Virus record (IMG/VR): IMGVR_UViG_3300047322_001237
Span: 186,001-250,000 of that record
DNA length: 64,000 nt
Reading direction: 5' to 3' (one strand)
Within the stretch, counting starts at the first letter, position 1, and every line of letters begins with the position of its first letter. Below the pieces are notes generated by a model. That model had not been told where the DNA came from. It did no database searches and saw only the letters and a list, made by a program, of their open reading frames with translations. The position numbers and the translations under genes are program-made. Shown piece after piece: positions 6,053 through 52,062 of the stretch.

Positions 6053-6083
6053 GTTCTTTGTCTTCCAATCGGAATAAATAAAA

Positions 6084-6111
6084 AGCCCCGAGACACGAGT
6101 GTCCCGGGGCT
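6084..6111 (-). terminator. Intrinsic terminator
   Basis: AGCCCCG...CGGGGCT stem followed by TTTTATTTATTCC on minus strand. Confidence 0.8.
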
Positions 6112-6136
6112 CCTAAACGCATCAGCGGACTAAGCG

Positions 6137-8275: not shown

Positions 8276-8356
8276 TGTTGTCTACCTTACGTTTCAAAAG
8301 AGACCCATGGCAGAGCGCTCGCGGCGCACGCGCCACGAGTCTCTTTGTCGGGCGTA

Positions 8357-9739: not shown

Positions 9740-9771
9740 GATTGCTTGAACCTTTCAAATGAAGGAATAAA

Positions 9772-9808
9772 ACCTGAGACTCCAGGAAACATCCCCGGAG
9801 TCTCAGGT
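9772..9808 (-). terminator. Intrinsic terminator
   Basis: 12-bp stem ACCTGAGACTCC/GGAGTCTCAGGT followed by TTTATTCC on minus strand. Confidence 0.8.
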
Positions 9809-9852
9809 CCTACCCAAGACGTGTAGAACGTATTAGGTCACCGCACGAGCCG

Positions 9853-11151
9853 TTAGGCCGCTGCCTTAGCTTCTTCCGGCTTGGCTTCTTCCTTCTTCGC
9901 GCCGAAGGCCTTGATCGACTGCTCGACTTGCTGGTTGAGCGACTTGCCGACCTTGACCGCGTACGAAGCGAGCGCCACGTACGGCGTGTCGATCAGCTTG
10001 AGCGCTGCGCGCGCTGCCTTGATCGCTTCGCCCTGGCCTTCTTCCTTCTTCTGCGCTTCGTCCATCGCCTTCAGCAGCTCGTTCTTCGCCTTCTCGCCGC
10101 TGGCGATCGCGCCTTCGTTCGCCTTGATCGCCTGACCGATGTTGATCACGGCGTCGCAGACGGCGATCATGTGTTCCTTGTTCTGGTGAACCGGAACGTC
10201 TTCGCCCTTGAAGTCTGCCGAGGTCTTGTTGAACGGCATGATGCCGGCCTTCGACTTCTCGATGTCCTTCGCGATCACCACGACGAGTGCGTTGCCGCCG
10301 GGCAGTTCTTCCGAACGGCCGACCTTTGCTTCGCCTTCGACCGGGATGCCTTGCGATGCTGCGTCGTGCACGGCTTGCAGGCCGAACGCGTCGTGATCGA
10401 GTGCCTTCGCGAGTTCGCCGATGTTCGACAGATCCTTCGTGCTGCCTTCGATGCCCGACGTCCATGCGCCGTAATCGCTGAACACCTTCTTCGCGACTTC
10501 AGCCATGCGCGCAGCGCCTTCAGCGCCTTCCGGCACTTTGCCTGCGATGTGCAGTGCCTTCGCCATGCCGGCGTTCTTGAAGGTCTTCTCGCTGGCTTCG
10601 CCATCGACCTTGCCTGCCGCGGCCTTCAGTTCTTCGGCGCGCTTCATCATCGGCTCGGTGTTGTCCCAGAGCTTCTTCCAGAACGACTTGATCCACTCGA
10701 TCGCCTTCTTGACGGCGGCGACGATCGTGGCCCACACCTTCTGCAGCGTTTCTTTCACTTCTTCCAGCGCGATCTTGGTCGCGTCTTCACGGCGCGAGAT
10801 CGAACCGAACGATTCGAGGGCCGGCGTCACGCGCTTCGTGTTGATGCTGACGCGCTTGTACATGTGGTTCAACGACGTCCGCAGGATCGCAGCACCGCCT
10901 TGTTCCAGGCCGCCGTGCTCGAGCGCTGCCTTCAGGTCGTCGCGGATCGATTCGAGCGCTTCTGCGGTGTCGACGGCTTCGTCGGTCAGCGCATCGTGTT
11001 CGGCCAGGCCGGCTTCGTCTTCGGCGATGTCCGTCAGACCTTCTTCTTGCGAGTTCGCGAGGTCCGACACTTCGCTGGTTTCGGCTTCTTCGGGCAGCAG
11101 GTTTTCTTCTTCCATCGCTGCGACGAGACCAACGTGAGAAATGCGACGCAT
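9853..11151 (-). CDS. Internal head/ejection protein paralog
   Basis: AAMEEE, ALES, PALESF, IALEEVKETLQKVWATI motifs; AGGAG RBS. Confidence 0.75.
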   Translation of the reverse strand: MRRISHVGLVAAMEEENLLPEEAETSEVSDLANSQEEGLTDIAEDEAGLAEHDALTDEAVDTAEALESIRDDLKAALEHGGLEQGGAAILRTSLNHMYKRVSINTKRVTPALESFGSISRREDATKIALEEVKETLQKVWATIVAAVKKAIEWIKSFWKKLWDNTEPMMKRAEELKAAAGKVDGEASEKTFKNAGMAKALHIAGKVPEGAEGAARMAEVAKKVFSDYGAWTSGIEGSTKDLSNIGELAKALDHDAFGLQAVHDAASQGIPVEGEAKVGRSEELPGGNALVVVIAKDIEKSKAGIMPFNKTSADFKGEDVPVHQNKEHMIAVCDAVINIGQAIKANEGAIASGEKAKNELLKAMDEAQKKEEGQGEAIKAARAALKLIDTPYVALASYAVKVGKSLNQQVEQSIKAFGAKKEEAKPEEAKAAA

Positions 11152-36666: not shown

Positions 36667-37380
36667 CTACGCGCCGGTCGCCGCGAGGATCGATTGCATC
36701 GCCGTTGGCGCAAGCGTCCTCGCAGGCTTGCTGGAACGTCCATAGGGACTGAGCAAGATCGGCGACGGCTTCAGTGCTAAATCGAAAGGCTCGACACCGA
36801 TGGGACCTTTTCGCTTCACGATGTTGACCGAGACGCCGTCGGCTGCTGGCCGGATGGCGAGTCGCAGCGACGCGGGCGATGTGTCCTGCTGCACGGCAAG
36901 CGGACGGAAAACGAAAAACAGCATCTCCGACGACTGCGAGACCAGTAACAGACGCCGCAGCGATTCGGGACGCATGTGCTGCTGCCACAGTAAGACCGCC
37001 CCGCATGTATTCGCCTTCAGTATCTGCTCAGTCGACCAGAGCACGTCCGCCGTCTTTTCGACCTCCAGCCGAATCAACTTCTCCGGCGGAACGCCGATAT
37101 ACGCGAGTCCCTGGACGTTCGGAACATGTGGCGGTTTGATTAATACAACAGGCCGTTTCGCCACCGTGGTCAGCGCCGGCTGCAACATGCGCACTTCGCC
37201 GATCCCTGGCTGTTGGACTAGCAGTTCGACCAAGGTGCCAATCGGCCACCCCCCGCCAGGCAATTCCGCCGATAGCCGGTCGTAGCCGGTGTCGACCGTG
37301 CGCCCTGCCCTTCTTGCCAACTGGTTACCGCGCCAGAGGGACGGGTGGATTTCTTCAATGTCCTTGGGAAGTGCTGACAT
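36667..37380 (-). CDS. imuA: ImuA/SulA-like RecA-fold protein
   Basis: HPSLWRG...TGYDRLSAELPGGGWP...ELLVQQPGIGE...LWSTEQILK...LRRL; start MSALPKD. Confidence 0.85.
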   Translation of the reverse strand: MSALPKDIEEIHPSLWRGNQLARRAGRTVDTGYDRLSAELPGGGWPIGTLVELLVQQPGIGEVRMLQPALTTVAKRPVVLIKPPHVPNVQGLAYIGVPPEKLIRLEVEKTADVLWSTEQILKANTCGAVLLWQQHMRPESLRRLLLVSQSSEMLFFVFRPLAVQQDTSPASLRLAIRPAADGVSVNIVKRKGPIGVEPFDLALKPSPILLSPYGRSSKPARTLAPTAMQSILAATGA

Positions 37381-37395
37381 CGTCGCGCCTAAACA

Positions 37396-37411
37396 CTGTA
37401 TAGATGTACAG
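37396..37411. promoter_or_regulatory. LexA (SOS) box
   Basis: CTGT-ATAGATGT-ACAG, canonical CTGT-N8-ACAG, 15 nt upstream of the imuA start. Confidence 0.88.
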
Positions 37412-37834
37412 TATCCTACACCCTTTTTCGCGGCGCATCGTCTACCACTTAGGGAACCGCTTGGAGAGACAGTTAGTTGCGTGGTGAAAACCACAAAAAA
37501 CGTATCATTCATTACGTTTTGGCGCCGTGACTGTCTGCCAACCTCGGCCGACTTCCGGATCACGTCAAAGAACGCTTGCCAGCGGCCACTTAGTTCTTTT
37601 TCCGTGAAACATTCCCCGCGAGCTGCCGCCGACGCCTTGATTTAGAACAAGTTGGCGCCTTCGAAAATTTGTCCCGAGTGTTTCACGGGACGTCATTCGA
37701 ACTTAAGACTACTTCGAGGTTCCACGCCCTCTTCCCCGCCCTGCTTGACCGACAAAAAGTGACAGTACAGCGAAGTATACTTGCTCTGCCCTTGTTTACA
37801 AGCTAGAGTTCGACACAATTCGGTCGTGCGCCGC

Positions 37835-37896: not shown

Positions 37897-39099
37897 GTGA
37901 ATGCAAGCACTCTGCTCGCCAGCGGCCTGCCGCCGGCGCTTGACTACGCCGCGTCCATGGACACATTGGCTGATGTGTCCGCCCGTGCCTCGGGTGTTCT
38001 AAATCAGATCCGCGATCGGATGCTGGAACCATATCCGCGCAAACGCCCGCCCACGTTCACGAGCGCACAGGTGGCCGGCCTGTGCGGACTTGAAAAAATG
38101 CGTTTCCAGTATCTGACTACGAAAGGCGATCTCCCCACCGGCACGTCGATTAAAAATGGCAAGAGCAAAGTCTTTACGTTGGAAGAGACACTACGGTATA
38201 TCCGGGCTGTCGGCAATCGCCCGCCGCGACCAGAGAACGCTCCCGGCAAAGTTGTGACGGTGGCCAACTTCAAAGGCGGTGTGGCTAAGACTACGACGGC
38301 CGTCTCGCTCGCTCAGGGACTCACCTTACGCGGTCGTAAGGTTCTCGTTATCGACTGTGATCCCCAAGGCACCGCTACGCAGTTATGCGGCTTCTCGCCC
38401 GAAACGGAAATAGGCGAGGAGATGACGCTCATGCCTTTGATCTACGGCGATGAAACGAGACTGGACTACGCAGTCCAACAAACCTACTGGCAGGACCTAG
38501 ACCTGGTCCCGGCGTCTTCCGGTCTCTTTAGCGCTGAGTTTCATATTCCGGGCAAGCTGGCCACCGACCACAAGTTCGAATTCTGGAACATCTTGAATCA
38601 GGGCCTCGAAGGCCTCAAAGACAAATACGACGCCATCGTCATCGACACTCCGCCATCTCTAAGTTATCTGACGATCAATGCGTTGATGGCGGCGAACGGA
38701 CTATTGATGCCCTGCCCGCCCGAGGGGCTCGACTTTGCCAGCTCCACTCAGTTCTGGTTCCTCTTCACCGAAATGTCGAGGCACGTTCCAGCAATGCGTG
38801 AGACGAAAGACTTCGATTTCGTCAATGTCGTGCTCACGAAATCGAAGAGTGACGACCTTTCCGGCGTTGTACGGGGCTGGCTGCAAAAGGCCTACGGAGA
38901 TCGAGTCCTTCCGTATGAGATTCCCGACTCCGTCGTCCCGAAGAGCGCATCTGCTCAACTCTCTACCGTCTACGACCTTACCAAGCCCGAGGGCAGCGTG
39001 GCAGCCTACACCCGCTTCAAGGATCCGATGGATCAGTTGGTGAGGCACATCGACTCCCAGTTTGTACAGGCTTGGGCGTCTTCCATGTTGGAGGTCTAA
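37897..39099 (+). CDS. parA: ParA partition ATPase (type Ia, N-terminal HTH extension)
   Basis: Deviant Walker A NFKGGVAKTT, DCDPQG, DTPPSL; GTG start with GGGG RBS. Confidence 0.95.
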   Translation: MNASTLLASGLPPALDYAASMDTLADVSARASGVLNQIRDRMLEPYPRKRPPTFTSAQVAGLCGLEKMRFQYLTTKGDLPTGTSIKNGKSKVFTLEETLRYIRAVGNRPPRPENAPGKVVTVANFKGGVAKTTTAVSLAQGLTLRGRKVLVIDCDPQGTATQLCGFSPETEIGEEMTLMPLIYGDETRLDYAVQQTYWQDLDLVPASSGLFSAEFHIPGKLATDHKFEFWNILNQGLEGLKDKYDAIVIDTPPSLSYLTINALMAANGLLMPCPPEGLDFASSTQFWFLFTEMSRHVPAMRETKDFDFVNVVLTKSKSDDLSGVVRGWLQKAYGDRVLPYEIPDSVVPKSASAQLSTVYDLTKPEGSVAAYTRFKDPMDQLVRHIDSQFVQAWASSMLEV

Positions 39100-40094
39100 T
39101 GCGCGCCGCTCAAAGACTTAGTGAAAAGATTGGTGACATCGACATCCCAGAACCCGGTCAATCGCCGGCGGCCGGTGATCCGTTTCGTCCAAGGACGGCA
39201 CCAGGTGGAGCGCTCGCCTTTCAGCATGCAATGCGCGAGAAGCAGGCCGAGCTCGACGCGATGTCCGCACAGCTGGCCGAACTGCAAGCTCAGAAGCAGA
39301 CGAACTCGCCCAGCGGCGTCGAGATTCCCCTCGACCAACTGCATGAAGTCGCAGGTCGCAGACGCTACATGCCGCCGGAAAAGTACAATGAATTGCGGGA
39401 AAACCTGCGGAACAACAAGCTGATTCAGCTGCCCGTCATTCTGCCACGTGCAGAAGGTGGCTTCGAAATACAGTCGGGACATCACCGGATCGACGCTTAT
39501 CGGGAACTCGGGCGTTCGACCATTCGCTGTGTTCTGGGTGACGCGACGGGCGATGAAGCTGACGACGGCGCGTTCTGGGCCAATCTGATGCAGTCGGACC
39601 TGACTGACTATGAGAAGTACGTTGGACTGACGCGCGTACATTCGAAACATCCGGAATTGGGCCAAGTCGAGCTAGGCGAGCTCGTCGGCATTAGCACTTC
39701 CCACCTCAACGCCCTGCTCTCTTTCGGTCGTTTGCCTGAGCAGGCCCGCGCGATTCTCGATACCAATAAGGCGATCATGGGCGCGAACGCGGCCGCGGCT
39801 TTTGCGGCTATCGCGGAGGCCGGCAAGGCGGAGCGGGTTGTGGAAGCGGTACGACGTCTCTCCGAGCGGGAGCTAGATCAGGCGCAGGCGGTGAAGTTTG
39901 CAAAAGCCGTTGAGACGCCCAAGGCAACGAAGCCGGCTGCTGAGTCGTACAAGGTGAAGACCGGAAAGAGTACGTGGTGCGATGTGCGCAAGACGAAAAA
40001 CATCATGCGCATCGAGTTCCAGTCCGAAGAGGTGGCCAATGCCGTCCAAGAAGCCATCAAGCAAACCCTCGAGGCGCTCGCCGCAAAGTCCTAA
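39099..40094 (+). CDS. parB: ParB partition protein
   Basis: TAATG overlap with parA; ParB N-domain (...FEIQSGHHRIDAY...) and HTH (ELGELVGISTSHLNALL). Confidence 0.93.
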   Translation: MRAAQRLSEKIGDIDIPEPGQSPAAGDPFRPRTAPGGALAFQHAMREKQAELDAMSAQLAELQAQKQTNSPSGVEIPLDQLHEVAGRRRYMPPEKYNELRENLRNNKLIQLPVILPRAEGGFEIQSGHHRIDAYRELGRSTIRCVLGDATGDEADDGAFWANLMQSDLTDYEKYVGLTRVHSKHPELGQVELGELVGISTSHLNALLSFGRLPEQARAILDTNKAIMGANAAAAFAAIAEAGKAERVVEAVRRLSERELDQAQAVKFAKAVETPKATKPAAESYKVKTGKSTWCDVRKTKNIMRIEFQSEEVANAVQEAIKQTLEALAAKS

Positions 40095-40162
40095 ACGCTA
40101 AGTGCTTGATTCTTTTGATTTCCTTAGTACGGAAAAAGGAGACGGCAGTGAAATAGCTGCTA

Positions 40163-40307
40163 GAAACACGAAGGCCCCCAGCTGGAAACTGAGGGCCTTC
40201 GCATAAGTGGGCTTGGCTGGAAACCGTCGCTCACTACACTCCCAAGCTGGAAACTTGGAAGGGTACTTCGTCAACCCCGAGTGTAGCGAATAGCGATCGA
40301 CAGTCAA
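40163..40307 (-). ncRNA. Candidate counter-transcribed RNA of the rep leader, with its promoter
   Basis: Minus-strand TTGACT-16-TACACT (40307-40280); transcript would fold CCAAG and GAAGGCCC hairpins and end at GTGTTTCT. Confidence 0.55.
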
Positions 40308-40345
40308 GCAAATTCAATCCATTTTTGAGAAATGGACCGCTCGAC

Positions 40346-41434
40346 ATGTCTATCGCGCAACAGCTCGTTGCTGGCGAGGGTGAAACACACCCCGACGATT
40401 CAGCAGCCCTCACCGCTTTCCGGTGTGACTCGACAAACCTGCCTTGGGTCATCTTCCGGGCTGCGTTCCGTGCAGCACACATTGAGGAGATCCCTCCTCG
40501 CGCACGTGCGGTTCTTTCCGCCCTCGCCCGCACCGTCGACGCCGCCAAGCCGTTCGCCGCGATCTTCGCTCGTCGTGAACTGCTCACAGGACGCGCACTG
40601 CAATCCATGCGCACCTTCTACCGCAGCCTCGATGACTTGGAGTCCGCCGGTCTAATCGATCGCCGCGCTCAATCCCGCTACGTTGAAGCCGGTCTCTTCG
40701 GTCGTGCCTACATCCACCTCACCGCGCGAGCAGCCGAGCTTCTAGGGCTCGTTGAGTCGATGCAACCGCCCTCACCTGAGCCCGTCGAATCTTCGCTTCC
40801 GCATCCGTCTGCCAACTTGGCAGACGGTGGAATATATAAGGATCTAAGCCCTTCTGTTTTTCAAAAGAGACAACCGGGGCAAGTGCCTGAGGATCTCCAG
40901 CGTCTGCGGTCCCTGGGTTTTTTTGATTTCTTGATTTTCAAACTCATGCGGGAAGCGCGTGAGCATGGCAAACGTCTCTCGGATGTCGTGGAAGCAACAT
41001 GGGACCACCTGAAGCTCGCCAAAGCCCCAATCAACTACCTGCGGAGTCTGCTGCGGGGAACGGTTGATTTCGCTCACCAACTGCGCGCCAGGATTAACGT
41101 CAAAGCCGAGGAGCAGGCTCGGGTGAAGCGCACCTTGGAAGCCGATCAGGTAGCCCGTCAAAGCGCCGGCAAAACGTTCCTAGACGCCTCGGGGGCACGC
41201 AAGTACGTGATCGATGCCGACGGCGAGAACATGGTCGTCTACAACCGTGACGAAGGCATTGGTCGACAAGCCGCGGGTTGGAAAGAAGGTTTTGCTGCAG
41301 CGCTCGCTCGAGGTCAGATCCGTGCGGCGAGCAGCTACGTGCAGCCGGAGCAGGGCAGGGAACGTCCGCCAGTTACAGCACAGGTTCGGGAACACATCGC
41401 GGGACTGCGCAGCCTGCTGGGAGCTCGTCGCTAG
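40346..41434 (+). CDS. Replication initiator of Burkholderia chromid/megaplasmid type (winged-helix, often annotated replication protein O)
   Basis: NLPWVIFRAA...RARAVLSALARTVD...IFARRELL...RTFYRSLDDLE...GLFGRAYIHLT; third gene of the parA-parB-rep cassette; start may be TTG 40325. Confidence 0.8.
   Translation: MSIAQQLVAGEGETHPDDSAALTAFRCDSTNLPWVIFRAAFRAAHIEEIPPRARAVLSALARTVDAAKPFAAIFARRELLTGRALQSMRTFYRSLDDLESAGLIDRRAQSRYVEAGLFGRAYIHLTARAAELLGLVESMQPPSPEPVESSLPHPSANLADGGIYKDLSPSVFQKRQPGQVPEDLQRLRSLGFFDFLIFKLMREAREHGKRLSDVVEATWDHLKLAKAPINYLRSLLRGTVDFAHQLRARINVKAEEQARVKRTLEADQVARQSAGKTFLDASGARKYVIDADGENMVVYNRDEGIGRQAAGWKEGFAAALARGQIRAASSYVQPEQGRERPPVTAQVREHIAGLRSLLGARR
40805..40827. repeat. 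23-bp interrupted palindrome inside rep (candidate oriV)
   Basis: CCGTCTGCCAA-C-TTGGCAGACGG followed by AT-rich AATATATAAGG...TTTTTCAAAAG. Confidence 0.55.
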
Positions 41435-44101: not shown

Positions 44102-45631
44102 TTACATTGCATTGGGGATAACGACTGACGAGTACGCCAGTGCGCGAGTTCTAAGCAATTCCTGATTCTTTTGCTGATACGCCATGTGCTTCTCGACGTC
44201 GGCGCAGTAAAAGGAAATGCATTCAGGCGTCTTTCCCGTCTTCAGCTTTCGAGTCCGGCCAAACATCTGCAGGATCTGCTGCTGACTGGAGATCGCCACG
44301 GACATGATGTTCGTGGTGAGGTTCGGGATGTCGACCGCGGTGCCTGCCGAGATCGGTGTCGTGACGCGGATGTCCGCTTCGATACAGTTCTCGAACGGGT
44401 CCTCTTCCACGTAACGACGCACGTCCAGGTTCGGATACTGCTTCTGCAGGAACTCCGTCACGAGCGTGCAGAATTCGATCGACGCGCAGAAAATGATCGC
44501 CTTCTCAGTCGGCTGATACGTCCTCAGGTACTTCGCCTTAAGCACCTGGTCAATCAGGTTGAGGTAGTTCTTCAGGACAGGCGGGTTCTTCATCAGGTAC
44601 TTCTCGAACACATGGTTCGAGTAGTTACCTTGCATGTCCTTGGTGCGGATGGCGTCAGGCCGCGCAATGCGGTAGAACAGGGCGGTCGCATTGGTGTAGC
44701 GGTCGTATGCCGGACCCTTATGGCGGTCAGGGGACGGATACGCGATCTCATACATCCGCTGGATGAACGCATCTTCCTTGTCGAGCGTTGCGGACAACGA
44801 CAGCGACTTATGGCAGTGCGTGTAGAGATCCACCAGGAAGTTCAGGTGAAAATCCTGGTGCACTTCGTCGATGAGGCGGAACCCCGATCGCAGCGTTTGC
44901 ATCAACTCCGATGGACGACATGCATAGCCCATCTCAAGCGTCTGGTCGCCGTACTCCTTGTAGAGTTTGAACCAGTTCTGGATCGTCTTGTTACTGATCA
45001 GGACGATCTTGCTCGTAAGCCGACCTTCGAGCGCCATCTCCAGAAGCGCCATCAGATGATCGCTTCCGCGGATGATCATCAGGTCTTCAATCGCGATGTC
45101 GAACACTTCGCGGATTTCGTCACGCCACTTCTCCAGATACATCGGCTTCACGATGATCACCGGAGCAAGGCGCGTCTTCGCCACAGCAAAGAGCGACGTT
45201 ACGCCTTTACCTTTACCCGTCTGAAACTCGATCAGCTTCGAGACCGAACCGTCCTCCTTGAGGACGTAGTCGACGCCTTCATCCTGATAGTCGTGCAGGT
45301 TCCAGCTGTCGAAGATCTTGAAGTCAACTTCTCGAACCGGCGGCAACTCGACCTGCTCGATGTCGACGAGCGAATCCTTCAGGTTGTGAAACGCGAGGTA
45401 TTCCTTGAATTTCTTCAGGACGTTGATGTGATAGCGATACTCACCAGTGTCAGCACAATGCGTCGCATAGACCGGAGGCTTCGGAGGCGGCTTTGTCGAA
45501 TAAGGACTCGGCTTGGCGCGAAGGGGCTGCACGAACTGCTTGGTGAATCCGAGCACCGCGGGCATGGCGCGCGGCGTCACCTTGCTGACGACGAAGTGAT
45601 GCGAATGAAGACGAATCAGAAGTTCAGCCAT
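44102..45631 (-). CDS. SF2 (DExH) helicase (phiKZ gp75-like)
   Basis: QTGKGK, DEVH, SAT, QMFGRTR motifs; start MAELLIRL. Confidence 0.9.
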   Translation of the reverse strand: MAELLIRLHSHHFVVSKVTPRAMPAVLGFTKQFVQPLRAKPSPYSTKPPPKPPVYATHCADTGEYRYHINVLKKFKEYLAFHNLKDSLVDIEQVELPPVREVDFKIFDSWNLHDYQDEGVDYVLKEDGSVSKLIEFQTGKGKGVTSLFAVAKTRLAPVIIVKPMYLEKWRDEIREVFDIAIEDLMIIRGSDHLMALLEMALEGRLTSKIVLISNKTIQNWFKLYKEYGDQTLEMGYACRPSELMQTLRSGFRLIDEVHQDFHLNFLVDLYTHCHKSLSLSATLDKEDAFIQRMYEIAYPSPDRHKGPAYDRYTNATALFYRIARPDAIRTKDMQGNYSNHVFEKYLMKNPPVLKNYLNLIDQVLKAKYLRTYQPTEKAIIFCASIEFCTLVTEFLQKQYPNLDVRRYVEEDPFENCIEADIRVTTPISAGTAVDIPNLTTNIMSVAISSQQQILQMFGRTRKLKTGKTPECISFYCADVEKHMAYQQKNQELLRTRALAYSSVVIPNAM

Positions 45632-45697
45632 AATGAACCTGCATAGAACGGAGGAAGGGGATTGCGCGGACGGTTGCAATCCCCCGCACTACGATGC

Positions 45698-47689
45698 TTA
45701 TGCGCCGTTACGTTCCAGATGCTCGAAGACCTCGCGCGGACAGAGCGCGACGTCAAACGGGTGATCCATCCGGTTGGTACTGATGAAGCTGATCGGGTCG
45801 GTGATGGCTTCGCGGTGATCCTCGAAAGCCATCGTCGCGGAAAGCGAACGCGACAACATCGAAAGCGACATCACACCGAGACCTTCATCGGTCCAAGGCT
45901 TCGGCAAGCTGTAGTCGCCGTCCTCCGCCGAAACAATCATCGCTTCGTAGAGAACGACATCAAGCACTGTGAGGTTCACGTCAAGCTTGCTGTTGACCAG
46001 GTCGTACAGTTCGATCAGGGCGTCATCCGGCCTGACGTTCTTGTCCCGGTCTTGCATCATCTTGACGCTCGACTCCAACATCTTCGCGATGTCACGCGAA
46101 TGGTCCGACATGTTGAAGTGCTTGAGGGGAAGCGCCAGAATCGGCAGCGACCAGTCCCAATCCCTCATATCGATGACGTAATTCCCGGTTTCCGTATCGA
46201 GATCCCAGCCGACGCGCCGAATGTGATGCAAGAGCGAATGCGTCATCGAAGCTTTCCGACCGCTCACCGCCGTCAGGATGTCGACGCCTTCCGCCTTCCC
46301 GTATTCGCCGACCAACAGCCCCACGTACTCGAGCTCCGAGAAGCGCGCGATGTTGAGATTGTCGGGATCGTCGATCTCGTTCACGTCGTTCAAATTCGGT
46401 GCAGACTCCGCCGCGATCACCAGCTTCACCGGCAAGTCCTTCAACCGATCCGCCATGAGATACGAGTTGTCGTCCGACCCCACCTTCAGGTACAGCTTGT
46501 CCGCATCCCGCAAGACGATGGCCTCGATCGATGCCGAGCTGTCCAAGTGCTTAACCGACAGCACGGACTGCGACGACTTCTCGGTCAGCAACATGCAACA
46601 CATGTGACCGATGTTCGTGAAATCCGGCACCGAGTTGGCGAGTTCGCCGAAGCACGTCGAGCACACGCCGACAGGATCGGGATGTGCGCATCGCATGACC
46701 GAGCGAACCCGAACCGTCTTACCGACCAGATGCTCGTCCCCCTTGCGGAGGATCTTGAGCTTGTTCTCCTTTTCGTCCAGATAGAACTTGCCGGCGAGAC
46801 GCCCCAGGTCCTTCTTGCGCATCGGCCACTTCACGTACTTGGTCGTACCGCAATCCCCCTTATGCAGGTTCTGCACGTTCATGGACATGAGCTGCAGACG
46901 ACGCGAGAAGTACTCGGCCTGCTGCAACGGCGCCTTCGAGAAGATCAGCGATTTCGCGGCCGAACGGGATTCGACCAGCGAGTCGCGGAAGTTCCGATAG
47001 CCTTCGGTATAGCTGCGCAGAATCGGCAGCTCGAAGACGTTCGAGTCGATCTCGGTGACGCGACCGCGAGCGGACACGCACTGGAGCAACTGATCGAACT
47101 TCACCGTACCCGCACGCGCGGCAAGCGCGAGCGGATTCTTCTTCAGATCGACGCCGCCCTTGATCACTGCGCCGACGGCCTGATAGCTGTCCTCGAGCAT
47201 CTTGTCCGTGACCTTCTCCAAGGGCACCGAGAACAACGGCTTCTTCGCCTCAATGATCTTCGGATGGTCGAGCATCTCGATGAAGTCAGTGATGTCGAGC
47301 GACACCACGTATTCTTCGAGTCGGTACGAGAGCTCGTTGTACATCTCGTTCGTGATCTCGTACGTGCGCTTGGCCAGTCGGTCGAGCGTGACTGCCGGAT
47401 CGCCGTGATAGGCGTCAAACGTATCCCACACCACGCTGGCGAGCAGATCCAGGTGCGTGTTGGAGCCGAGGCGCTTGTCACCCAGCACCGAGAGAACGTG
47501 ATGCTTCTTCAACACCGGCGTCTGGGGAAACTCGCGGTGGAACTGCCAAACGTATGAGCTGTAGATGGTCGAGCGGAAGTCGACCTCCATTTCCCCGTCG
47601 TCGAACACACAGATGAACGACCCCCAGAGCGAATTCCACAGATCCTCTGTGCTCATTCCGATGAGAGTGCGCGCGCTGATGCGTCTCAT
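45698..47689 (-). CDS. Non-virion RNAP beta' subunit, C-terminal part (phiKZ gp74-like)
   Basis: EYFSRRLQL...LHKGDCGT...RSVMRC...CSTCFG...SQSVLSVKH. Confidence 0.88.
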   Translation of the reverse strand: MRRISARTLIGMSTEDLWNSLWGSFICVFDDGEMEVDFRSTIYSSYVWQFHREFPQTPVLKKHHVLSVLGDKRLGSNTHLDLLASVVWDTFDAYHGDPAVTLDRLAKRTYEITNEMYNELSYRLEEYVVSLDITDFIEMLDHPKIIEAKKPLFSVPLEKVTDKMLEDSYQAVGAVIKGGVDLKKNPLALAARAGTVKFDQLLQCVSARGRVTEIDSNVFELPILRSYTEGYRNFRDSLVESRSAAKSLIFSKAPLQQAEYFSRRLQLMSMNVQNLHKGDCGTTKYVKWPMRKKDLGRLAGKFYLDEKENKLKILRKGDEHLVGKTVRVRSVMRCAHPDPVGVCSTCFGELANSVPDFTNIGHMCCMLLTEKSSQSVLSVKHLDSSASIEAIVLRDADKLYLKVGSDDNSYLMADRLKDLPVKLVIAAESAPNLNDVNEIDDPDNLNIARFSELEYVGLLVGEYGKAEGVDILTAVSGRKASMTHSLLHHIRRVGWDLDTETGNYVIDMRDWDWSLPILALPLKHFNMSDHSRDIAKMLESSVKMMQDRDKNVRPDDALIELYDLVNSKLDVNLTVLDVVLYEAMIVSAEDGDYSLPKPWTDEGLGVMSLSMLSRSLSATMAFEDHREAITDPISFISTNRMDHPFDVALCPREVFEHLERNGA

Positions 47690-47740
47690 TTGTTTTCCTT
47701 GTTAAGCGGCCCGGCCGATGAGCTGGCCGGGCGGTCGTCT

Positions 47741-49990
47741 TCAATGAGTGAGTGCTGCTTGCTGTTTTGCCAGGTTGCCGCTACGGCCTTTCCAAGACGG
47801 CGAGTAGGGTCGATAGACGAACTGGACGCCAGCGCACGCGAGGATGTGCTTGACCAACTGCAACGGACGCGAGTTGCCGTACGGGATGACCGAACGATCA
47901 ACGGCGTTGTGGATATTGGTCGGCTCGTCTGCATCGAGAATCGCGTTACAGACCATCTCGTGCGTTTGCGGATTGTTGTTGCGATCCATGACCTCGGCCG
48001 ATGCCCGCGGTCCAACGTACGATGCCAAGATCCGCTTTTCCGCCTCGCCCCATGCACGAATCGACTGTGCACGGTAGGGCAGGGCGTACTTGTCGGCGTT
48101 GGTCACCTGAGACAGGACACCGTAGTGCTGAACCTTGCCCGACGACACGGCCGTCCAGTCGTCCGCGATCTTTTCCAGCAGGATGATGTACACGCTGCCA
48201 ATCCGCACCGGGACCTTGGTCGTCACGCGTCGACCAGAGTTGCCGACGTAAGTCACGGGACCGTACGTCGACGGATAGTTGGCTTCGAGCATCCGAACGA
48301 TGTCACTCGACTCGCGCGGGTTGTTCGTCGGCAGATGCAGATAGATGCCGTTGCGAATCACCTGAGCCAGGTGTTCCGCACGCGTCTTCAGATACGCACC
48401 ACCTTCAAACCACGAGTGCATGACAGGTGCCACGATTTCGTAGTAACCCATCAGGTAGTTCCACGCGTGATCGAACACCGGCTTGTTGCTCGCCTCGAGT
48501 TCCTGCGCCTTCGCCAATGCCTGACGATCGTTCTCCGCGATGCCGAACCATGCACGAATCTGCTTGGCCACGTCACGCGAATGTGCGTTGATGTAGATCT
48601 CGTACTTGCGGCCGAGATTCATCCGCGACACCGTCGAGTTCGGGTCCATCACGATGTCTGCACGATTGCCATCCGCGTCGACCGGCATGTGATCCGCGGG
48701 CACGACGTTACAGATCACGCCCTTACCACCGTGCGTGTCGGTCAGCTTGAAGCCGATCGTCGGCGTGACGTCGTACTCGATCGTGAACTCGATGCGCCAG
48801 TCATCCAGCGGAGCCTTGCGATACAGCTTGTAGATGCGCTCCTTGGATTCCTGGACCACGGACAGGGCTTCGACCACGAGACGATGGAACTCCGGCGTCA
48901 GACGCAGGGACTCCTTGCGCTCGCGCTCAAGGCGTCGCCATTCGTAAACGATGTCCGAGTAAAACTGACGACGCGCCCGATCGTAACGATCAGCCTGAGC
49001 ATCCATGCCGATCGGCGTCGGCGAGTTGTTCGCCTGCGTATCGTGATGAACACGGATGTCGATCACCCGGCCGCCTGCACCGTCTGCGTAGATCATCTTG
49101 TCAAAAACGTGATCGATCTCCATCAGGTCGTACGTGCCTTGCTCGACGATCGCCAACTCGCGGTCGTAGCTTTTCGGATCCTTGTCGTGCGGACGCAGTG
49201 CCATCAGCACGCCGTCTTCACGAACGAATTCACCGATGTCCGGGAACGCCTTGAAGTTGTCCTCGTCACCGTACAGATTCAGCGGGTAGGCCTTGGCGCC
49301 AAATTCGACGACACGCGTCTCGTACTTCTTGAAGCCGAATTCTTTGAGCACCTCCGCGCTGATCATGATGCCGTCCTCAGAGGTGGCCGGATGACTCATG
49401 TACGCGATGTTGCATTCACGCCCGTACTTGTAGCCGCCCGTATCCGTCACAGAGGGAGAATCCGTGAGGATCGTGTCCGCCTTCAGATAGCTGCCCACGC
49501 GGATGTCGGAAAGCGAAGGCTTGATCGCGTTCCGGAACCCGAAGTAGCTGTGATACGACGTGTGCGTCGTGATGTTGATGCAGCCGATCTCCTTCGTGTG
49601 CACGTTCTCGTAAATGAGCACGCTGTGCGGGTTGTCCTGGCGGCGCTTGAGCACCGTGTCCTGTCCGAACGTTTCGCGATAGCGGTCGATCACCTTGATC
49701 ACTTCGCAGTCGACCGGCACCTTCGTCGAGAAGGTGTACTTGCCGAATTCACGTTCCGTGCCGCTCTGGCAGCGGCGCTCGGTCGAGCCCTTGATCACGA
49801 GACATTGACCGACGTGCGACGAAAACATCTGTTTGCGGGCAGCCGAGTTATGGCCGTCCCACGGGTTCAACCCGCAAACGTTCATGAGCTCCGGGTCCAG
49901 CTCATTCGGTTCTTCCAGCAGAACACCCGAGCGACGAATCGCGGATGTCATGGGCTTGATGCTCGCAGTCAGACTGGCGGTGTCCATCAT
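47741..49990 (-). CDS. Non-virion RNAP beta subunit, C-terminal part (phiKZ gp71-73-like, uninterrupted)
   Basis: SAARKQMFSSH, EDGIMIS, GFKLTDTHGGKGVI, DIVMDPNSTVSRMN. Confidence 0.9.
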   Translation of the reverse strand: MMDTASLTASIKPMTSAIRRSGVLLEEPNELDPELMNVCGLNPWDGHNSAARKQMFSSHVGQCLVIKGSTERRCQSGTEREFGKYTFSTKVPVDCEVIKVIDRYRETFGQDTVLKRRQDNPHSVLIYENVHTKEIGCINITTHTSYHSYFGFRNAIKPSLSDIRVGSYLKADTILTDSPSVTDTGGYKYGRECNIAYMSHPATSEDGIMISAEVLKEFGFKKYETRVVEFGAKAYPLNLYGDEDNFKAFPDIGEFVREDGVLMALRPHDKDPKSYDRELAIVEQGTYDLMEIDHVFDKMIYADGAGGRVIDIRVHHDTQANNSPTPIGMDAQADRYDRARRQFYSDIVYEWRRLERERKESLRLTPEFHRLVVEALSVVQESKERIYKLYRKAPLDDWRIEFTIEYDVTPTIGFKLTDTHGGKGVICNVVPADHMPVDADGNRADIVMDPNSTVSRMNLGRKYEIYINAHSRDVAKQIRAWFGIAENDRQALAKAQELEASNKPVFDHAWNYLMGYYEIVAPVMHSWFEGGAYLKTRAEHLAQVIRNGIYLHLPTNNPRESSDIVRMLEANYPSTYGPVTYVGNSGRRVTTKVPVRIGSVYIILLEKIADDWTAVSSGKVQHYGVLSQVTNADKYALPYRAQSIRAWGEAEKRILASYVGPRASAEVMDRNNNPQTHEMVCNAILDADEPTNIHNAVDRSVIPYGNSRPLQLVKHILACAGVQFVYRPYSPSWKGRSGNLAKQQAALTH

Positions 49991-50068
49991 GCGTATTCCT
50001 TGTGAAGATGCTTGAATTTGTTATCAGTGTTTTCCACTCTGATAAAGCAGCTGCGCCGCTTCAGAGTA

Positions 50069-50076
50069 GTGATATG
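50069..50076 (-). promoter_or_regulatory. Candidate early promoter CATATCAC overlapping a plus-strand TATG
   Basis: Divergent gap between RNAP beta and the 50110 gene. Confidence 0.55.
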
Positions 50077-50109
50077 TAACCGTGATTCTTTTGAGACGGA
50101 TTTCTAACA

Positions 50110-50478
50110 ATGGCCTCAACTTCCAGCACATCCAGCAACGCGATTAATGCCCTCATGTTCGATCCGGGACCGACCGTCTTTTACACAGACGGCTTTCGCC
50201 AGGTGCTCGAAGACCACATGACGTACCTGCGCCAACATCAGTCGACGCAGCTCATGTCCGTGAGTCCTCAGGCTGCCTGGGAAAACGATCAGGATCTGTT
50301 TGGGTTCTTGCAGGTGGTCAACTTGGCGCCGCAATACCACTGGGTGACCATGCGGATGAACAACTTCTCATCACCAGCGGAATTCGGCACAGGCGTCACG
50401 CAACTACTTATCCCTTCAAGCGTTGTCCTCGAACAACTGCGTTCCGCCTACATGACCAGTAATGTCTTGACGGCGTAA
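50110..50478 (+). CDS. Conserved jumbo-phage small protein
   Basis: 122 aa opposite-strand gene inside the RNAP block, ends at shared hairpin ~50497-50527. Confidence 0.6.
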   Translation: MASTSSTSSNAINALMFDPGPTVFYTDGFRQVLEDHMTYLRQHQSTQLMSVSPQAAWENDQDLFGFLQVVNLAPQYHWVTMRMNNFSSPAEFGTGVTQLLIPSSVVLEQLRSAYMTSNVLTA

Positions 50479-50547
50479 TGCAAAAAAAGAAAGAGTCGGA
50501 GAAGAGGGCGTGAGCTCTCTTCTCCGGCTTATGCCGCTAGGTCTGGT

Positions 50548-52062
50548 TTAGACCAAGCGGCCACCCGCGGGCGGGTAGTAGCCACCTTGCGGCTGCTGGA
50601 ACCCTTGCTGCGGATACATCGGTTGCTGCTGCGGATACATCGGCTGGCTCTGCTGATTCGCCCAACGCGATCCTTGCTGCTGCACCGGCGCTTGTTGCTG
50701 TGCCGGATAGCCACCAGTTGCGTAGACAACCGACGGGTTGGTCGCCATCACCGAGTTGAAGTCCAGCCCACGACCCGTGTGCACGAGATGCGGCGCTTGT
50801 TGCTGCGGCGCCGGTGCGTTCGGGTAGAAACCACCCGTCACCTGCGGCTGCTGGTACACCGGCTGATGATGCTGAACGGGTTGGTGCGGTTGAACCGGCT
50901 GATGAGGACGATGGGTTGCCGACATCCACGCTTGCTGGTGCTGCTGATGCATGGCGCGTTCTGCTTCACGTGCCGCCAGGAAACCGTCGAGAGGCTGACG
51001 ATTTGCCGGAGCCGTCGAGACCGGTGCTGCCGCGACAGGTGCCGGAGCTGCCACCGGAGTCGGGGCCGCCAGCACGACCGGAGCCGGTGCCACGGGCGGC
51101 GTCGGTTGCGGATACGACGAGGGCAATGCAGTTGCAGCAGGTTGGGTCGCGACCGGCGGTTCACCGGACGAGCCTTCGTTGCCAGCCTGCATCGGAACCT
51201 TGCGGATTTCCGACAGCATGACGCCGAGGTTGTCGAAGGTGCGTTCCCATTCGCAGTCGATCACGAGATCGGACGCCGGATTCGTCTCGTCGCCGAGCTG
51301 GTTCTCGAACGTGCTGGTCAGATCGTTGAGCGGTGCGATCACGGCAAGCGATGCCTGCATCAATGCATCCAGATTCGGCGCGACGTCGGAGTCGGAACCG
51401 CGGTGATACGACCCCTCCACGTCGATCTGAGGGAACATGAATTCCATCAGCGAGATCAACGTTTCCTTGTCCTTCACGCGGCACTTGATGCCGTAGATGT
51501 CGTTGCCATCTTTCTTCAGTTCCTGATACAGCGGGAACGTCACGACACCGACGCGCTTGTGGCGTTTTCCGCCGACCGATCCGGTCTTCTTCAGAAAGAT
51601 CGTGATGATGCGGCGCGCGGTCTGATCCGATGGCATTGCAGCCAGCACCTTCTTGAACAGATCGTAGGTCTTGTCATCGGCGTTTTTCACCTTCGACAGG
51701 AACTCAGACTGGTCCGGCGCGAGCTGTGCATGCAGGTCGGTCGAGATCGCGATCGAGATCAGCTGCAGCATCAGTTCGGCTGCGACTAGGTTGAAGCGCA
51801 CCATCAGGACCGAGCGGAACTTCTCCAGCACTTCCGATTCGCCGCGCGTGATCGATTCCGCGAGTGGATGGAACAGCACGATCTGGCTCTTGTCCGGATT
51901 CGCGAGATGCTCAGGCGTCGGCAGTGCGAGTCGCTTGCCCTTGATCAGCACCGGCATCGTCTGCTTCATGAGCTTTCCGGAAACCAGGTTGTCGCTCGTG
52001 ACGACTAGGTTCGCGGTCTTCATGAGCGACTTATACAGCTCGATCAGATTGGGAGTTGTCAT
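50548..52062 (-). CDS. Conserved core protein (phiKZ gp70-like) with Pro/Gln-rich disordered tail
   Basis: Position between gp69-like and RNAP beta; QQPMYPQ repeats. Confidence 0.65.
   Translation of the reverse strand: MTTPNLIELYKSLMKTANLVVTSDNLVSGKLMKQTMPVLIKGKRLALPTPEHLANPDKSQIVLFHPLAESITRGESEVLEKFRSVLMVRFNLVAAELMLQLISIAISTDLHAQLAPDQSEFLSKVKNADDKTYDLFKKVLAAMPSDQTARRIITIFLKKTGSVGGKRHKRVGVVTFPLYQELKKDGNDIYGIKCRVKDKETLISLMEFMFPQIDVEGSYHRGSDSDVAPNLDALMQASLAVIAPLNDLTSTFENQLGDETNPASDLVIDCEWERTFDNLGVMLSEIRKVPMQAGNEGSSGEPPVATQPAATALPSSYPQPTPPVAPAPVVLAAPTPVAAPAPVAAAPVSTAPANRQPLDGFLAAREAERAMHQQHQQAWMSATHRPHQPVQPHQPVQHHQPVYQQPQVTGGFYPNAPAPQQQAPHLVHTGRGLDFNSVMATNPSVVYATGGYPAQQQAPVQQQGSRWANQQSQPMYPQQQPMYPQQGFQQPQGGYYPPAGGRLV

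What the first reader, a model, noticed from the sequence alone, without database searches (positions are those of the whole stretch)
40095..40345. Structured parB-rep intergenic region with convergent sigma70 promoters: ctRNA copy-number control
Seen: a minus-strand TTGACT-16-TACACT (40307-40280) and a plus-strand TTGGCT-16-TACACT (40213-40240). GCT(G/A)GAAAC occurs four times (40159, 40181, 40216, 40246), two of them as loops of hairpins (GAAGGCCC..GGGCCTTC and CCAAG..CTTGG). CTACACTC/GAGTGTAG can form an alternative stem. Established: repABC and many low-copy plasmids place an antisense RNA between the partition and rep genes. Inference: the replicon is actively regulated and not a relic.
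Basis: partly seen in the sequence, partly recalled or inferred. Interest (0 to 1): 0.7.

Follow-up and report, generated by a model that had tools for sequence, protein, structure and literature searches.

The report
Antisense RNA gene controlling phage-borne replicon
The gap between the partition gene parB and the replication gene rep holds a gene for a roughly 110-base antisense RNA of a family not yet described, which most likely limits production of the replication protein; this copy sits inside a giant phiKZ-like phage genome.

Summary
The minus-strand promoter (TTGACT-16-TACACT, 40307-40280) and a terminator hairpin (40170-40200) about 110 nt downstream bracket a three-hairpin antisense RNA.

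- Conservation: one full-length copy lies upstream of every one of 97 related rep genes in Burkholderiaceae plasmids, chromids and phage records. The -35 box is invariant and the hairpin stems covary.
- Experiment: in the family member pMOL28, a published genome-wide map places a transcription start on the minus strand at 2354. That is exactly 7 nt below the homologous -10 box. No plus-strand start lies between parB and repA.
- Plus-strand "promoter": it is not conserved as a promoter. It is the inverted-repeat partner of the antisense promoter and probably one arm of a leader switch that exposes or hides the rep start codon. This mechanism is inferred.
- GCTGGAAAC repeats: three of the four are hairpin-loop motifs. 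The copy at 40159 is part of the terminator tail.
- Novelty: there is no Rfam match and I found no description in the searchable literature. It is a new variant of antisense copy-number control.

The host record is a phiKZ-like jumbo phage, and related phages carry the same module.

The parts
37897..39099 (+). parA (partition ATPase; the exact start codon is uncertain)
   Evidence: Pfam AAA_31/CbiA. NCBIfam partition_RepA scores 214 bits, below its cutoff.
39072..40094 (+). parB (partition protein)
   Evidence: NCBIfam parB_part and Pfam ParB_N give weak matches. Homologues are annotated ParB/RepB/Spo0J.
40095..40159 (.). Variable spacer that travels with the par module. It contains CTAAGTGCTTGATT (40098-40111), the reverse complement of a motif found downstream of parB in related plasmids.
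   Evidence: It is not conserved with the rep cassette; DNA homology starts at about 40160.
40280..40307 (-). Promoter of the antisense RNA: -35 TTGACT (40307-40302), 16-nt spacer, -10 TACACT (40285-40280)
   Evidence: Found by the scanner. The -35 is invariant; the -10 is TACACT or TAAACT in nearly all (one reads GATACACT) and the spacer is ungapped in 94 sequences. The homologous pMOL28 promoter fires: TSS_2354-5, score 903, RpoD class 's', with boxes TTGACTCAGG and GCTACACTCC.
40160..40273 (-). Antisense (counter-transcribed) RNA, about 110 nt. The TSS is predicted at 40271-40273 and the 3' end in the U-rich tail at 40160-40169.
   Evidence: Covariance model R1 hits 40160-40271 on the minus strand at 83.4 bits (E 1e-23). 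The fold is -50.8 kcal/mol, z -4.25. Length is 103-118 nt in all relatives.
40242..40258 (-). SL1 of the antisense RNA (CCAAG/CUUGG stem, loop UUUCCAG). On the plus strand it is the target hairpin hp3.
   Evidence: Stem covariation: A-U 27, G-C 20 at the closing pair.
40207..40233 (-). SL2 of the antisense RNA (GGGC/GCCC-type outer stem, weak in this copy, presenting a third UUUCCAG)
   Evidence: Four of its six pairs show compensatory change.
40170..40200 (-). SL3, an intrinsic terminator hairpin (loop UUUCCAG), followed by GUGUUUCU. Its stem can also form on the plus strand.
   Evidence: 99% of cells are paired and 5 of 12 pairs show compensatory change. G-U wobbles are 18 on the minus strand against 4 on the plus. 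The scanner lists a terminator-like site.
40209..40242 (+). Left arm of the rep-leader inverted repeat (GGGCUUGGCUGG...CUACACUCC). It lies inside the antisense target and is the proposed anti-sequestor.
   Evidence: It pairs with 40278-40310 in the plus-strand fold. The core of stem P3 is kept, with C-G 53 and U-A 35 at one pair.
40278..40310 (+). Right arm of the leader repeat. It is the same DNA as the antisense promoter, and it is the proposed sequestor of the rep start codon.
   Evidence: 40293-40302 is complementary to 40347-40356. The pair 40300/40349 is A-U in 40, G-C in 22 and G-U in 13 sequences.
40318..40336 (+). Conserved hairpin UCCAUUU/AAAUGGA just upstream of the rep start. It overlaps the weak Shine-Dalgarno GGA.
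   Evidence: CCATTT and AATGG are nearly invariant in 94 sequences. It is predicted in the folds.
40346..41434 (+). rep (362 aa, helix-turn-helix initiator of the pMOL28 RepA type). The first 36 nt are conserved at nucleotide level.
   Evidence: No Pfam or NCBIfam hit. There are 116 plasmid records with homologues, including pMOL28 at 34% identity. The stretch ATGnnnATCGCGCAAC...GTTGCTGGCGAGG is essentially invariant in 94 loci, with a few single-base variants.

Best explanation
The parB-rep gap encodes a roughly 110-nt antisense RNA, transcribed from 40272 leftwards to about 40163.

Anatomy:
- It starts at a constitutive sigma-70 promoter that lies in the rep leader and points away from rep.
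- It ends at a GC-rich hairpin with a U-rich tail.
- It folds into three stem-loops. In this copy all three present the same loop, UUUCCAG.

Proposed action:
- rep has no promoter of its own. It is read from parA-parB transcripts that pass the hairpin.
- The antisense RNA pairs with the complementary leader segment and lowers Rep synthesis. This would set copy number and act as an incompatibility determinant.

Proposed (inferred) mechanism:
- In the free leader, the left arm (40209-40242) pairs with the right arm (40278-40310). The start codon is then accessible.
- When the antisense RNA occupies the left arm, the right arm (40293-40302) pairs with AUG plus codons 2-4 (40347-40356) and blocks initiation.

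Status of each step:
- Shown: conservation, covariation, strand bias, and a mapped TSS in a homologue.
- Inferred: repression of rep, and the refolding mechanism.
For: - Breadth: model R1 finds exactly one full-length minus-strand copy (54-113 bits) upstream of rep in each of 97 loci. These span six Burkholderiaceae genera with Rep identity down to 33%.
- Promoter: the -35 is invariant, the -10 is TACACT or TAAACT in nearly all, and the spacer is ungapped. RNA length is 103-118 nt.
- Structure: 96.5% of cells are paired. 13 of 22 pairs show compensatory change, in 89 cells against 26 in shuffles (0 of 500). Slid controls reach at most 63% paired.
- Strand: the antisense span folds better on the minus strand in 93 of 94 sequences. 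Z-scores are -4.68 (minus) against -3.02 (plus), with minus lower in 49 of 54. G-U wobbles are 37 on the minus strand against 13 on the plus.
- Experiment: pMOL28 TSS_2354-5 is on the minus strand with score 903 +/- 51, rank 435 of 5,765, and RpoD class 's'. It lies 7 nt below the homologous -10 at 2366-2361.
- Operon: there is no plus-strand TSS between the parA promoter and 3056. parA, parB and repA read 149, 174 and 33 NPKM within one annotated operon.
- Distant paralogue: the pHG1 copy (30% identity) keeps a minus-strand TTGACA-17-TAAACT and a terminator about 95 nt downstream, although the sequence has diverged.
- Mechanism: covariation in P3 and P7. The modelled unpaired probability of the AUG falls from 0.57 to 0.36 when the target is blocked. 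It is lower in 30 leaders and higher in 3, out of 54.
Against: - No transcript data exist for this phage; no RNA run was listed for the window.
- The pMOL28 map also shows other minus-strand TSSs inside parAB (500, 1505, 1664), so antisense starts are common there.
- The 3' end and the RNA's abundance have not been measured anywhere.
- Support for the leader switch rests mainly on two covarying pairs. These may reflect few evolutionary events, and 18% of P3/P7 cells are unpaired.
- In this copy the U-tail is interrupted (GUGUUUCU).
- The matched SL1 and SL3 loops are not required by simple antisense pairing and remain unexplained.
Confidence: 0.8

Rival explanations
1. The repeated GCTGGAAAC units are DNA binding sites (iterons or operators) for Rep or ParB. 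The region would then be an origin or an autoregulated operator, not an RNA gene.
For: - There are three direct repeats about 30-35 bp apart.
- The SL1 and SL3 loop sequences change together among replicons. They match in 50 of 85 against 19 expected, across several shared alleles. Sites for a co-evolving protein would behave this way.
Against: - Each repeat sits in the loop of a hairpin whose stem covaries. A duplex DNA site does not need that.
- The middle repeat does not follow the other two.
- Folding and wobble counts show a strand bias.
- A TSS is mapped in pMOL28.
- There is no AT-rich or DnaA-box neighbourhood.
- Loops can be inverted within the hairpin (CGCCAA instead of UUGGCG).
Confidence: 0.08
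2. Two convergent sigma-70 promoters face each other, and the plus-strand one (40213-40240) is the rep promoter.
For: TTGGCT-16-TACACT is present in the window. Some relatives read TTGACT at the -35 position.
Against: - It matches only 8 of 12 positions and is not listed by the scanner.
- The -35 third base and its spacing vary (TTAACT, TTTACT, TT-GCTG). The -10 degenerates to TGCACT or CGCTTC in many relatives.
- pMOL28 has no plus-strand TSS in the gap.
- A transcript starting at about 40247 would lack the left arm and most of the antisense target.
- The similarity is explained by its being the inverted-repeat partner of the antisense promoter.
Confidence: 0.12
3. The antisense promoter acts mainly by transcriptional interference with polymerases reading from parB into rep. 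The RNA product itself would have little role.
For: A strong promoter faces the incoming operon transcript only about 75 nt before rep. repA RNA is five-fold lower than parB RNA in pMOL28.
Against: Interference does not need the three hairpins. It also does not explain their covariation, the conserved RNA length, the loop motifs (including UUGGCG, known from IncI antisense loops) or the conserved terminator.
Confidence: 0.12
4. The conservation reflects only a structured cis-acting rep leader plus a bidirectional terminator. The minus-strand start would be transcriptional noise.
For: Plus-strand helices P3 and P7 show covariation. Antisense TSSs are pervasive in pMOL28.
Against: - The -35 hexamer is invariant and the spacer length is fixed in 94 sequences.
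- The TSS has a high score, rank 435 of 5,765.
- Structure is better on the minus strand.
- The promoter and terminator geometry is kept in the diverged pHG1 paralogue.
Confidence: 0.05

Closest known systems
repABC ctRNA of alphaproteobacterial plasmids (RepE / incA / inc-alpha; Rfam ctRNA_p42d RF00489)
   Same: - The gene order is the same: partition A, partition B, antisense RNA on the opposite strand, then the initiator gene.
- It has a sigma-70 promoter and an intrinsic terminator.
- The initiator is read from the partition operon.
- The proposed action is the same: antisense pairing refolds the leader so that the start region is occluded. The PMC6090056 review is cited. The p42d model comes from my own knowledge.
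   Different: - The Rep protein is unrelated; there is no RepC Pfam hit.
- There is no Rfam match.
- The RNA is twice as long (about 110 nt against about 50) and has three stem-loops instead of one.
- The hosts are Betaproteobacteria (Burkholderiaceae) and a phage.
Inc RNA / CopA of IncI-alpha, IncB and IncFII plasmids (ColIb-P9, R1)
   Same: - An antisense RNA is encoded in the rep leader and controls Rep translation through hairpin-loop contacts.
- Many family members carry 5'-UUGGCG-3' in the antisense loops. This is the motif described for ColIb-P9 Inc RNA (Asano et al. 1998, listed).
   Different: - There is no leader peptide and no evidence for an activating pseudoknot. Loop changes are not matched near the start site.
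- The Rep family differs.
- This copy carries UUUCCAG, not UUGGCG.
ColE1 RNA I
   Same: It is about 108 nt with three stem-loops that have 6-7-nt loops plus a single-stranded 5' tail. It is an untranslated negative copy-number regulator (own knowledge).
   Different: RNA I blocks primer maturation, and ColE1 has no Rep protein. There is no sequence relation.
pMOL28 parA28-parB28-repA28 replicon of Cupriavidus metallidurans
   Same: It is a true homologue. Rep identity is 34%, the gene order is the same, and the gap keeps the same promoter, terminator and start-region motifs.
   Different: The antisense RNA was not described for it in the literature I could search. Its TSS was recorded but assigned to a gene 16 kb away.

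Membership tests
repABC replicon / ctRNA_p42d | Initiator of the RepC family (Pfam RP-C / RP-C_C) | tested here: not met
   Rep has no Pfam or NCBIfam match at E <= 0.001-0.01. A profile search against PDB gives nothing.
repABC replicon / ctRNA_p42d | Match to the Rfam covariance model of the ctRNA | tested here: not met
   cmscan at E <= 10 returns only ctRNA_pGA1 at 13.9 bits against a gathering score of 45, which is noise.
repABC replicon / ctRNA_p42d | Antisense RNA gene between the second partition gene and the initiator gene, within one operon | tested here: met
   The arrangement holds in all loci. pMOL28 has a single operon and a minus-strand TSS in the gap.
Antisense-RNA (counter-transcript) control of plasmid replication | Active promoter on the strand opposite the rep leader | tested here: met
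   The -35 and -10 boxes are conserved. A TSS is mapped in the homologue pMOL28 at the predicted base. It has not been measured in this phage.
Antisense-RNA (counter-transcript) control of plasmid replication | Short, terminated, stem-loop RNA whose structure is under selection | tested here: met
   Terminator scans, covariation and minus-strand bias.
Antisense-RNA (counter-transcript) control of plasmid replication | Represses Rep synthesis, sets copy number and causes incompatibility in trans | not testable with these tools
   Only indirect evidence is available. repA RNA is five-fold below parB in pMOL28. Modelling suggests AUG occlusion. Co-resident replicons never share both hairpins, but this is not significant.
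Iteron-type origin or operator | Arrays of 17-22-bp direct repeats bound by Rep, next to AT-rich DNA and DnaA boxes | tested here: not met
   The repeats are 9-10 nt, sit in covarying hairpin loops, are irregularly spaced (22, 35 and 30 nt) and are not conserved as a set.

The most novel reading that the evidence does not exclude
A clade of phiKZ-like jumbo phages of Caballeronia and Paraburkholderia maintains itself in growing cells as a low-copy plasmid prophage. It would do so with a complete parAB / antisense-RNA / rep replicon of the pMOL28 type, regulated by this RNA. The two matched hairpin loops would form a combinatorial incompatibility code that lets several such elements share one cell. 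That would be a plasmid-prophage lifestyle in a phage group regarded as strictly virulent.
Probability: 0.4. Interest if true: 0.85.

Novelty: new variant of a known kind. Interest (0 to 1): 0.62.

Why it matters
- Scope of the family: antisense control of replication is a classic theme, but this RNA family is absent from Rfam and from the literature I could search. It accompanies the replication gene of over a hundred Burkholderiaceae replicons. These include the model plasmid pMOL28, replicons over 1 Mb in Caballeronia, and plasmids of plant and human pathogens.
- Practical use: naming it gives a handle on their copy-number control and incompatibility. It also explains an orphan strong TSS in published data.
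- Design: the layout is compact. The same DNA appears to serve as the antisense promoter and, in the mRNA, as the strand that hides the start codon.
- Phage context: an intact, regulated plasmid replicon inside a phiKZ-like jumbo phage, shared by related phages found in cultured isolates, makes the question of plasmid-like persistence of such phages directly testable.

Tried and rejected
- Rfam scan of the region: nothing above noise.
- RNA-seq for the window: no run was listed.
- TSS table of Maertens et al. 2020: it is truncated in storage, so the pMOL28 rows are missing. The 2026 TSS paper has no supplement held.
- Leader peptide: rejected. The only frame (GTG 40207 to TAG 40290) is not conserved, and the alignment has indels that are not multiples of three. 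The alternative ATG at 40332 is out of frame and its spacing varies.
- ColIb-P9-type activating pseudoknot between the target loops and the start region: rejected. The P6 arm and the GCUGGCG in codons 9-11 do not change when the loops change.
- Plus-direction attenuator terminator between the target and rep: none found.
- Covariation test of cognate against non-cognate spacer/start duplex energies: only a weak difference, -13.0 against -12.0 kcal/mol.
- Incompatibility signal from co-resident replicons: in the expected direction but not significant.
- Rep fold identity: the profile search against PDB found nothing. No structure prediction was run.

Full report
**1. The observation**

- The minus strand has TTGACT (40307-40302), 16 nt, then TACACT (40285-40280). 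This is the only sigma-70-like site the scanner reports in 39500-41000 (9 of 12 matches; shuffles give 0.5).
- The plus-strand TTGGCT-16-TACACT (40213-40240) exists but matches only 8 of 12 positions.
- GCT(G/A)GAAAC occurs at 40159, 40181, 40216 and 40246. The whole window has five matches against 0.75 expected, and no shuffle of 100 reaches five.
- The hairpins are at 40170-77/40193-40200 and at 40242-46/40254-58. Each carries CTGGAAA in its loop.
- CTACACTC (40234-41) is complementary to GAGTGTAG (40279-86).

**2. Surroundings and relatives**

- The flanking genes are parA (37897-39099), parB (39072-40094) and rep (ATG 40346 to 41434). Rep has no Pfam or NCBIfam family.
- DNA searches find the stretch from about 40160 through rep in 93 Burkholderiaceae plasmids at 70-85% identity. 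The homology stops exactly at 40160.
- The parA, parB, gap, rep order recurs in all loci fetched.
- The gap is more conserved than the protein, whose identity is 33-70%.
- Protein searches extend the family to 116 plasmid records. These include pMOL28 of Cupriavidus metallidurans (34%), a pHG1 paralogue (30%) and Caballeronia replicons over 1 Mb. There are also 80 genome loci and five IMG/VR records.

**3. An RNA gene on the minus strand**

- Promoter: in 94 distinct sequences the -35 (AGTCAAG on the plus strand) is invariant. The -10 is TACACT or TAAACT in nearly all, and the 16-nt spacer is never gapped.
- Length: about 105-115 nt downstream lies the GC-rich hairpin, followed on the minus strand by UUUUGUCUUUC. 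The span from start region to tail is 103-118 nt everywhere.
- Covariance model: it was built from 54 non-redundant minus-strand sequences. It finds one full-length hit per locus in 97 loci (54-113 bits; window 40160-40271, 83.4 bits). The plus-strand hits are only the terminator read backwards.
- Covariation on the model-aligned set:
  - 96.5% of cells pair.
  - 13 of 22 pairs show compensatory change (89 cells against 26 in shuffles; 0 of 500 shuffles).
  - Sliding the partners drops pairing to 63% or less.
- Strand:
  - The span folds more stably as minus-strand RNA in 93 of 94 sequences.
  - With dinucleotide shuffles, z is -4.68 (minus) against -3.02 (plus), and minus is lower in 49 of 54.
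  - G-U wobbles number 37 in the minus reading against 13 in the plus reading.
- Shape of the RNA:
  - a 5' tail;
  - SL1 (40258-40242);
  - an 11-nt linker, GGAGUGUAG..;
  - SL2 (about 40233-40207, weak in this copy);
  - the terminator SL3 (40200-40170).

**4. Experimental anchor**

- From the pMOL28 sequence, the homologous -10 is the complement of 2366-2361. That predicts a start at 2354.
- The Cappable-type TSS map of Grosse et al. 2022 (PMC9045368) lists TSS_2354-5 on the minus strand.
  - Its score is 903 +/- 51, rank 435 of 5,765.
  - The authors' own motif calls are -35 TTGACTCAGG and -10 GCTACACTCC, class 'strong RpoD'.
  - It lies between parB (1187-2186) and repA (2424-3603).
- The authors attached it to trbF, 16 kb away, and do not discuss it.
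- The same table shows no plus-strand TSS between the parA promoter (score 976) and 3056. It places parA, parB and repA in one operon with NPKM 149, 174 and 33.
- Other minus-strand TSSs occur inside parAB, so antisense starts are not rare there. The exact coincidence with a conserved promoter is still hard to ascribe to chance.
- The diverged pHG1 paralogue keeps a minus-strand TTGACA-17-TAAACT and a terminator about 95 nt downstream.

**5. The plus-strand 'promoter' and the leader**

- The two 'convergent promoters' are the two halves of one inverted repeat: GCTTGGCT...CTACACTC against GAGTGTAG...AGTCAAGC.
- The left half is not conserved as a promoter. The -35 reads TTAACT, TTTACT or TT-GCTG, and the -10 reads TGCACT or CGCTTC.
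- It does keep pairing with the right half in the plus-strand reading. One pair switches between C-G (53) and U-A (35), and there are 69 G-U against 32 A-C.
- The right half cannot be part of the antisense RNA, because it lies upstream of its start. This pairing therefore belongs to the rep leader, which must begin upstream of 40209.
- The spacer of the antisense promoter (40293-40302) is complementary to AUG plus codons 2-4 (40347-40356). The pair 40300/40349 is A-U in 40, G-C in 22 and G-U in 13 sequences. This explains the nucleotide-level invariance of the first codons.
- Partition-function modelling of 54 leaders gives an unpaired probability for the AUG of 0.57 when free and 0.36 when the antisense target is blocked. 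It is lower in 30 leaders and higher in 3.
- I therefore propose a two-state switch in which antisense binding frees the right arm to occlude the start codon. This is inference. The covariation rests mainly on two pairs and is not corrected for phylogeny.

**6. The loops**

- Three of the four repeats are the loops of SL1, SL2 and SL3. The 40159 copy is part of the U-tail template and is not conserved.
- Loop sequences differ among replicons: UUCCAG, UUGGCG, UUCCCG, UACCAG, UUAGCCG, UUGCCG and the inverted CGCCAA.
- SL1 and SL3 carry the same core in 50 of 85 unique RNAs, against 19.3 +/- 3.2 on permutation. Excluding UUCCAG it is 22 of 49 against 4.9. Simple antisense pairing does not require this, and it is unexplained.
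- UUGGCG is the loop motif of ColIb-P9 Inc RNA (reference listed).
- Replicons that share a genome never share both the SL1 hairpin and the SL3 loop, in 29 pairs. The chance rate is only 3.8% per pair, so this is not significant.

**7. Comparison with known systems**

- It works like the repABC ctRNA in position, orientation, operon logic and proposed refolding. It is not a member of that family: there is no RepC, no Rfam match, twice the length, and three stem-loops.
- It shares loop motifs and translational control with the IncI/IncFII antisense RNAs, but shows no leader peptide or pseudoknot signal.
- In gross shape it resembles ColE1 RNA I.
- I found no description of it for Burkholderiaceae replicons.

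**8. Context noticed**

- The record (278,988 bp, terminal repeats) is a phiKZ-like jumbo phage.
  - It has four phiKZ internal head protein paralogues and two pieces of the phage multisubunit RNA polymerase beta subunit.
  - Its nearest relatives are Burkholderia phage FLC9 and Ralstonia phages RP12/RP31.
- No GenBank phage has this Rep, this ParB or the DNA.
- Three other IMG/VR records carry both the phage polymerase and the module a few kb apart.
- The draft genome of Caballeronia arationis LMG 29324 holds phage DNA 85-93% identical to the window. It also holds several imuA-parAB-rep contigs.
- The par and rep halves have different histories, with the breakpoint at the antisense terminator.
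- GC content is uniform across the window.
- Together this argues that the replicon is in use rather than a relic.

**9. Verdict**

- The antisense-RNA reading is well supported. I give 0.8 for a regulatory antisense RNA, and about 0.4-0.5 for the specific refolding mechanism.
- The convergent plus-strand promoter is probably wrong.
- It is a new variant of a known kind of control. Interest is raised by the breadth of the family and by the jumbo-phage setting.

Noticed in passing
window 4592-11151 and 44102-52062: The record is a phiKZ-like jumbo phage. It has four phiKZ internal head protein paralogues, two RNA polymerase beta-subunit pieces (45698-47689 and 47741-49990) and a helicase (44102-45679). 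Its closest GenBank phage is Burkholderia phage FLC9, at 56% amino-acid identity for the polymerase. The plasmid-type par-rep module sits among these genes.
   Followed up: partly
L092, L095, L096 (IMG/VR records G001, G004, G005); G006 contig C275:134978-143663: Related jumbo-phage records carry the same par / antisense RNA / rep module a few kb from the phage polymerase. The cultured strain Caballeronia arationis LMG 29324 holds phage DNA 85-93% identical to the window. It also has at least three contigs with imuA-parA-parB-rep synteny. This suggests stable carriage in isolates.
   Followed up: partly
window 36667-37563 (minus strand): An ImuA homologue (translesion-synthesis associated; NCBIfam NF033429, 215 bits) lies just upstream of parA. 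It is syntenic with the module in the C. arationis contigs. No imuB or dnaE2 partner was looked for.
   Followed up: no
window 37897-41434 compared with L012, L015, L092, L095, L096: The partition and replication halves have separate histories. ParA/ParB are 90/84% identical to L095/L096, where Rep is 60%. Rep is 83% identical to L012/L015, where ParA is 41-44%. The most closely related phage (polymerase 97%) has ParA 45%, ParB 48% and Rep 78%. The DNA breakpoint is at 40160, the antisense terminator.
   Followed up: partly
window 40098-40111; L004, L006, L008, L010 about 2860-2990: Downstream of parB, related plasmids carry one or two copies of AATCAAGCACTTAG next to 14-16-bp palindromes such as TTCCCAAGTTGGGAA. 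These are probably centromere (parS) sites. The window has the motif once, inverted, and no palindrome here.
   Followed up: no
window 40349-40381: Codons 3-12 of rep (ATCGCGCAAC..GTTGCTGGCGAGG) are essentially invariant at nucleotide level in 94 loci, including rare codons. They can form a small hairpin (GCAAC/GUUGC). The part beyond the proposed start-codon helix has no explanation yet.
   Followed up: partly
L039 5093-5419 (Paraburkholderia sp. HD33-4, 406-kb contig); G009 contig C352:10879-11400 (the genome that holds L038): Fragments resembling the phage RNA polymerase subunits turn up in two Paraburkholderia genomes that carry this rep. One (L039) is intact over 117 aa and lies about 1 kb downstream of rep. 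The other carries stop codons and lies on contig C352 of the genome that holds L038; I did not check whether that contig also carries its rep. These may be remnants or further phage-plasmids.
   Followed up: no
L097 (pMOL28) 500, 1505, 1664 minus strand: The published TSS map lists further strong minus-strand starts inside parA and parB of pMOL28, with scores of 1898, 320 and 892. Their meaning is unknown.
   Followed up: no
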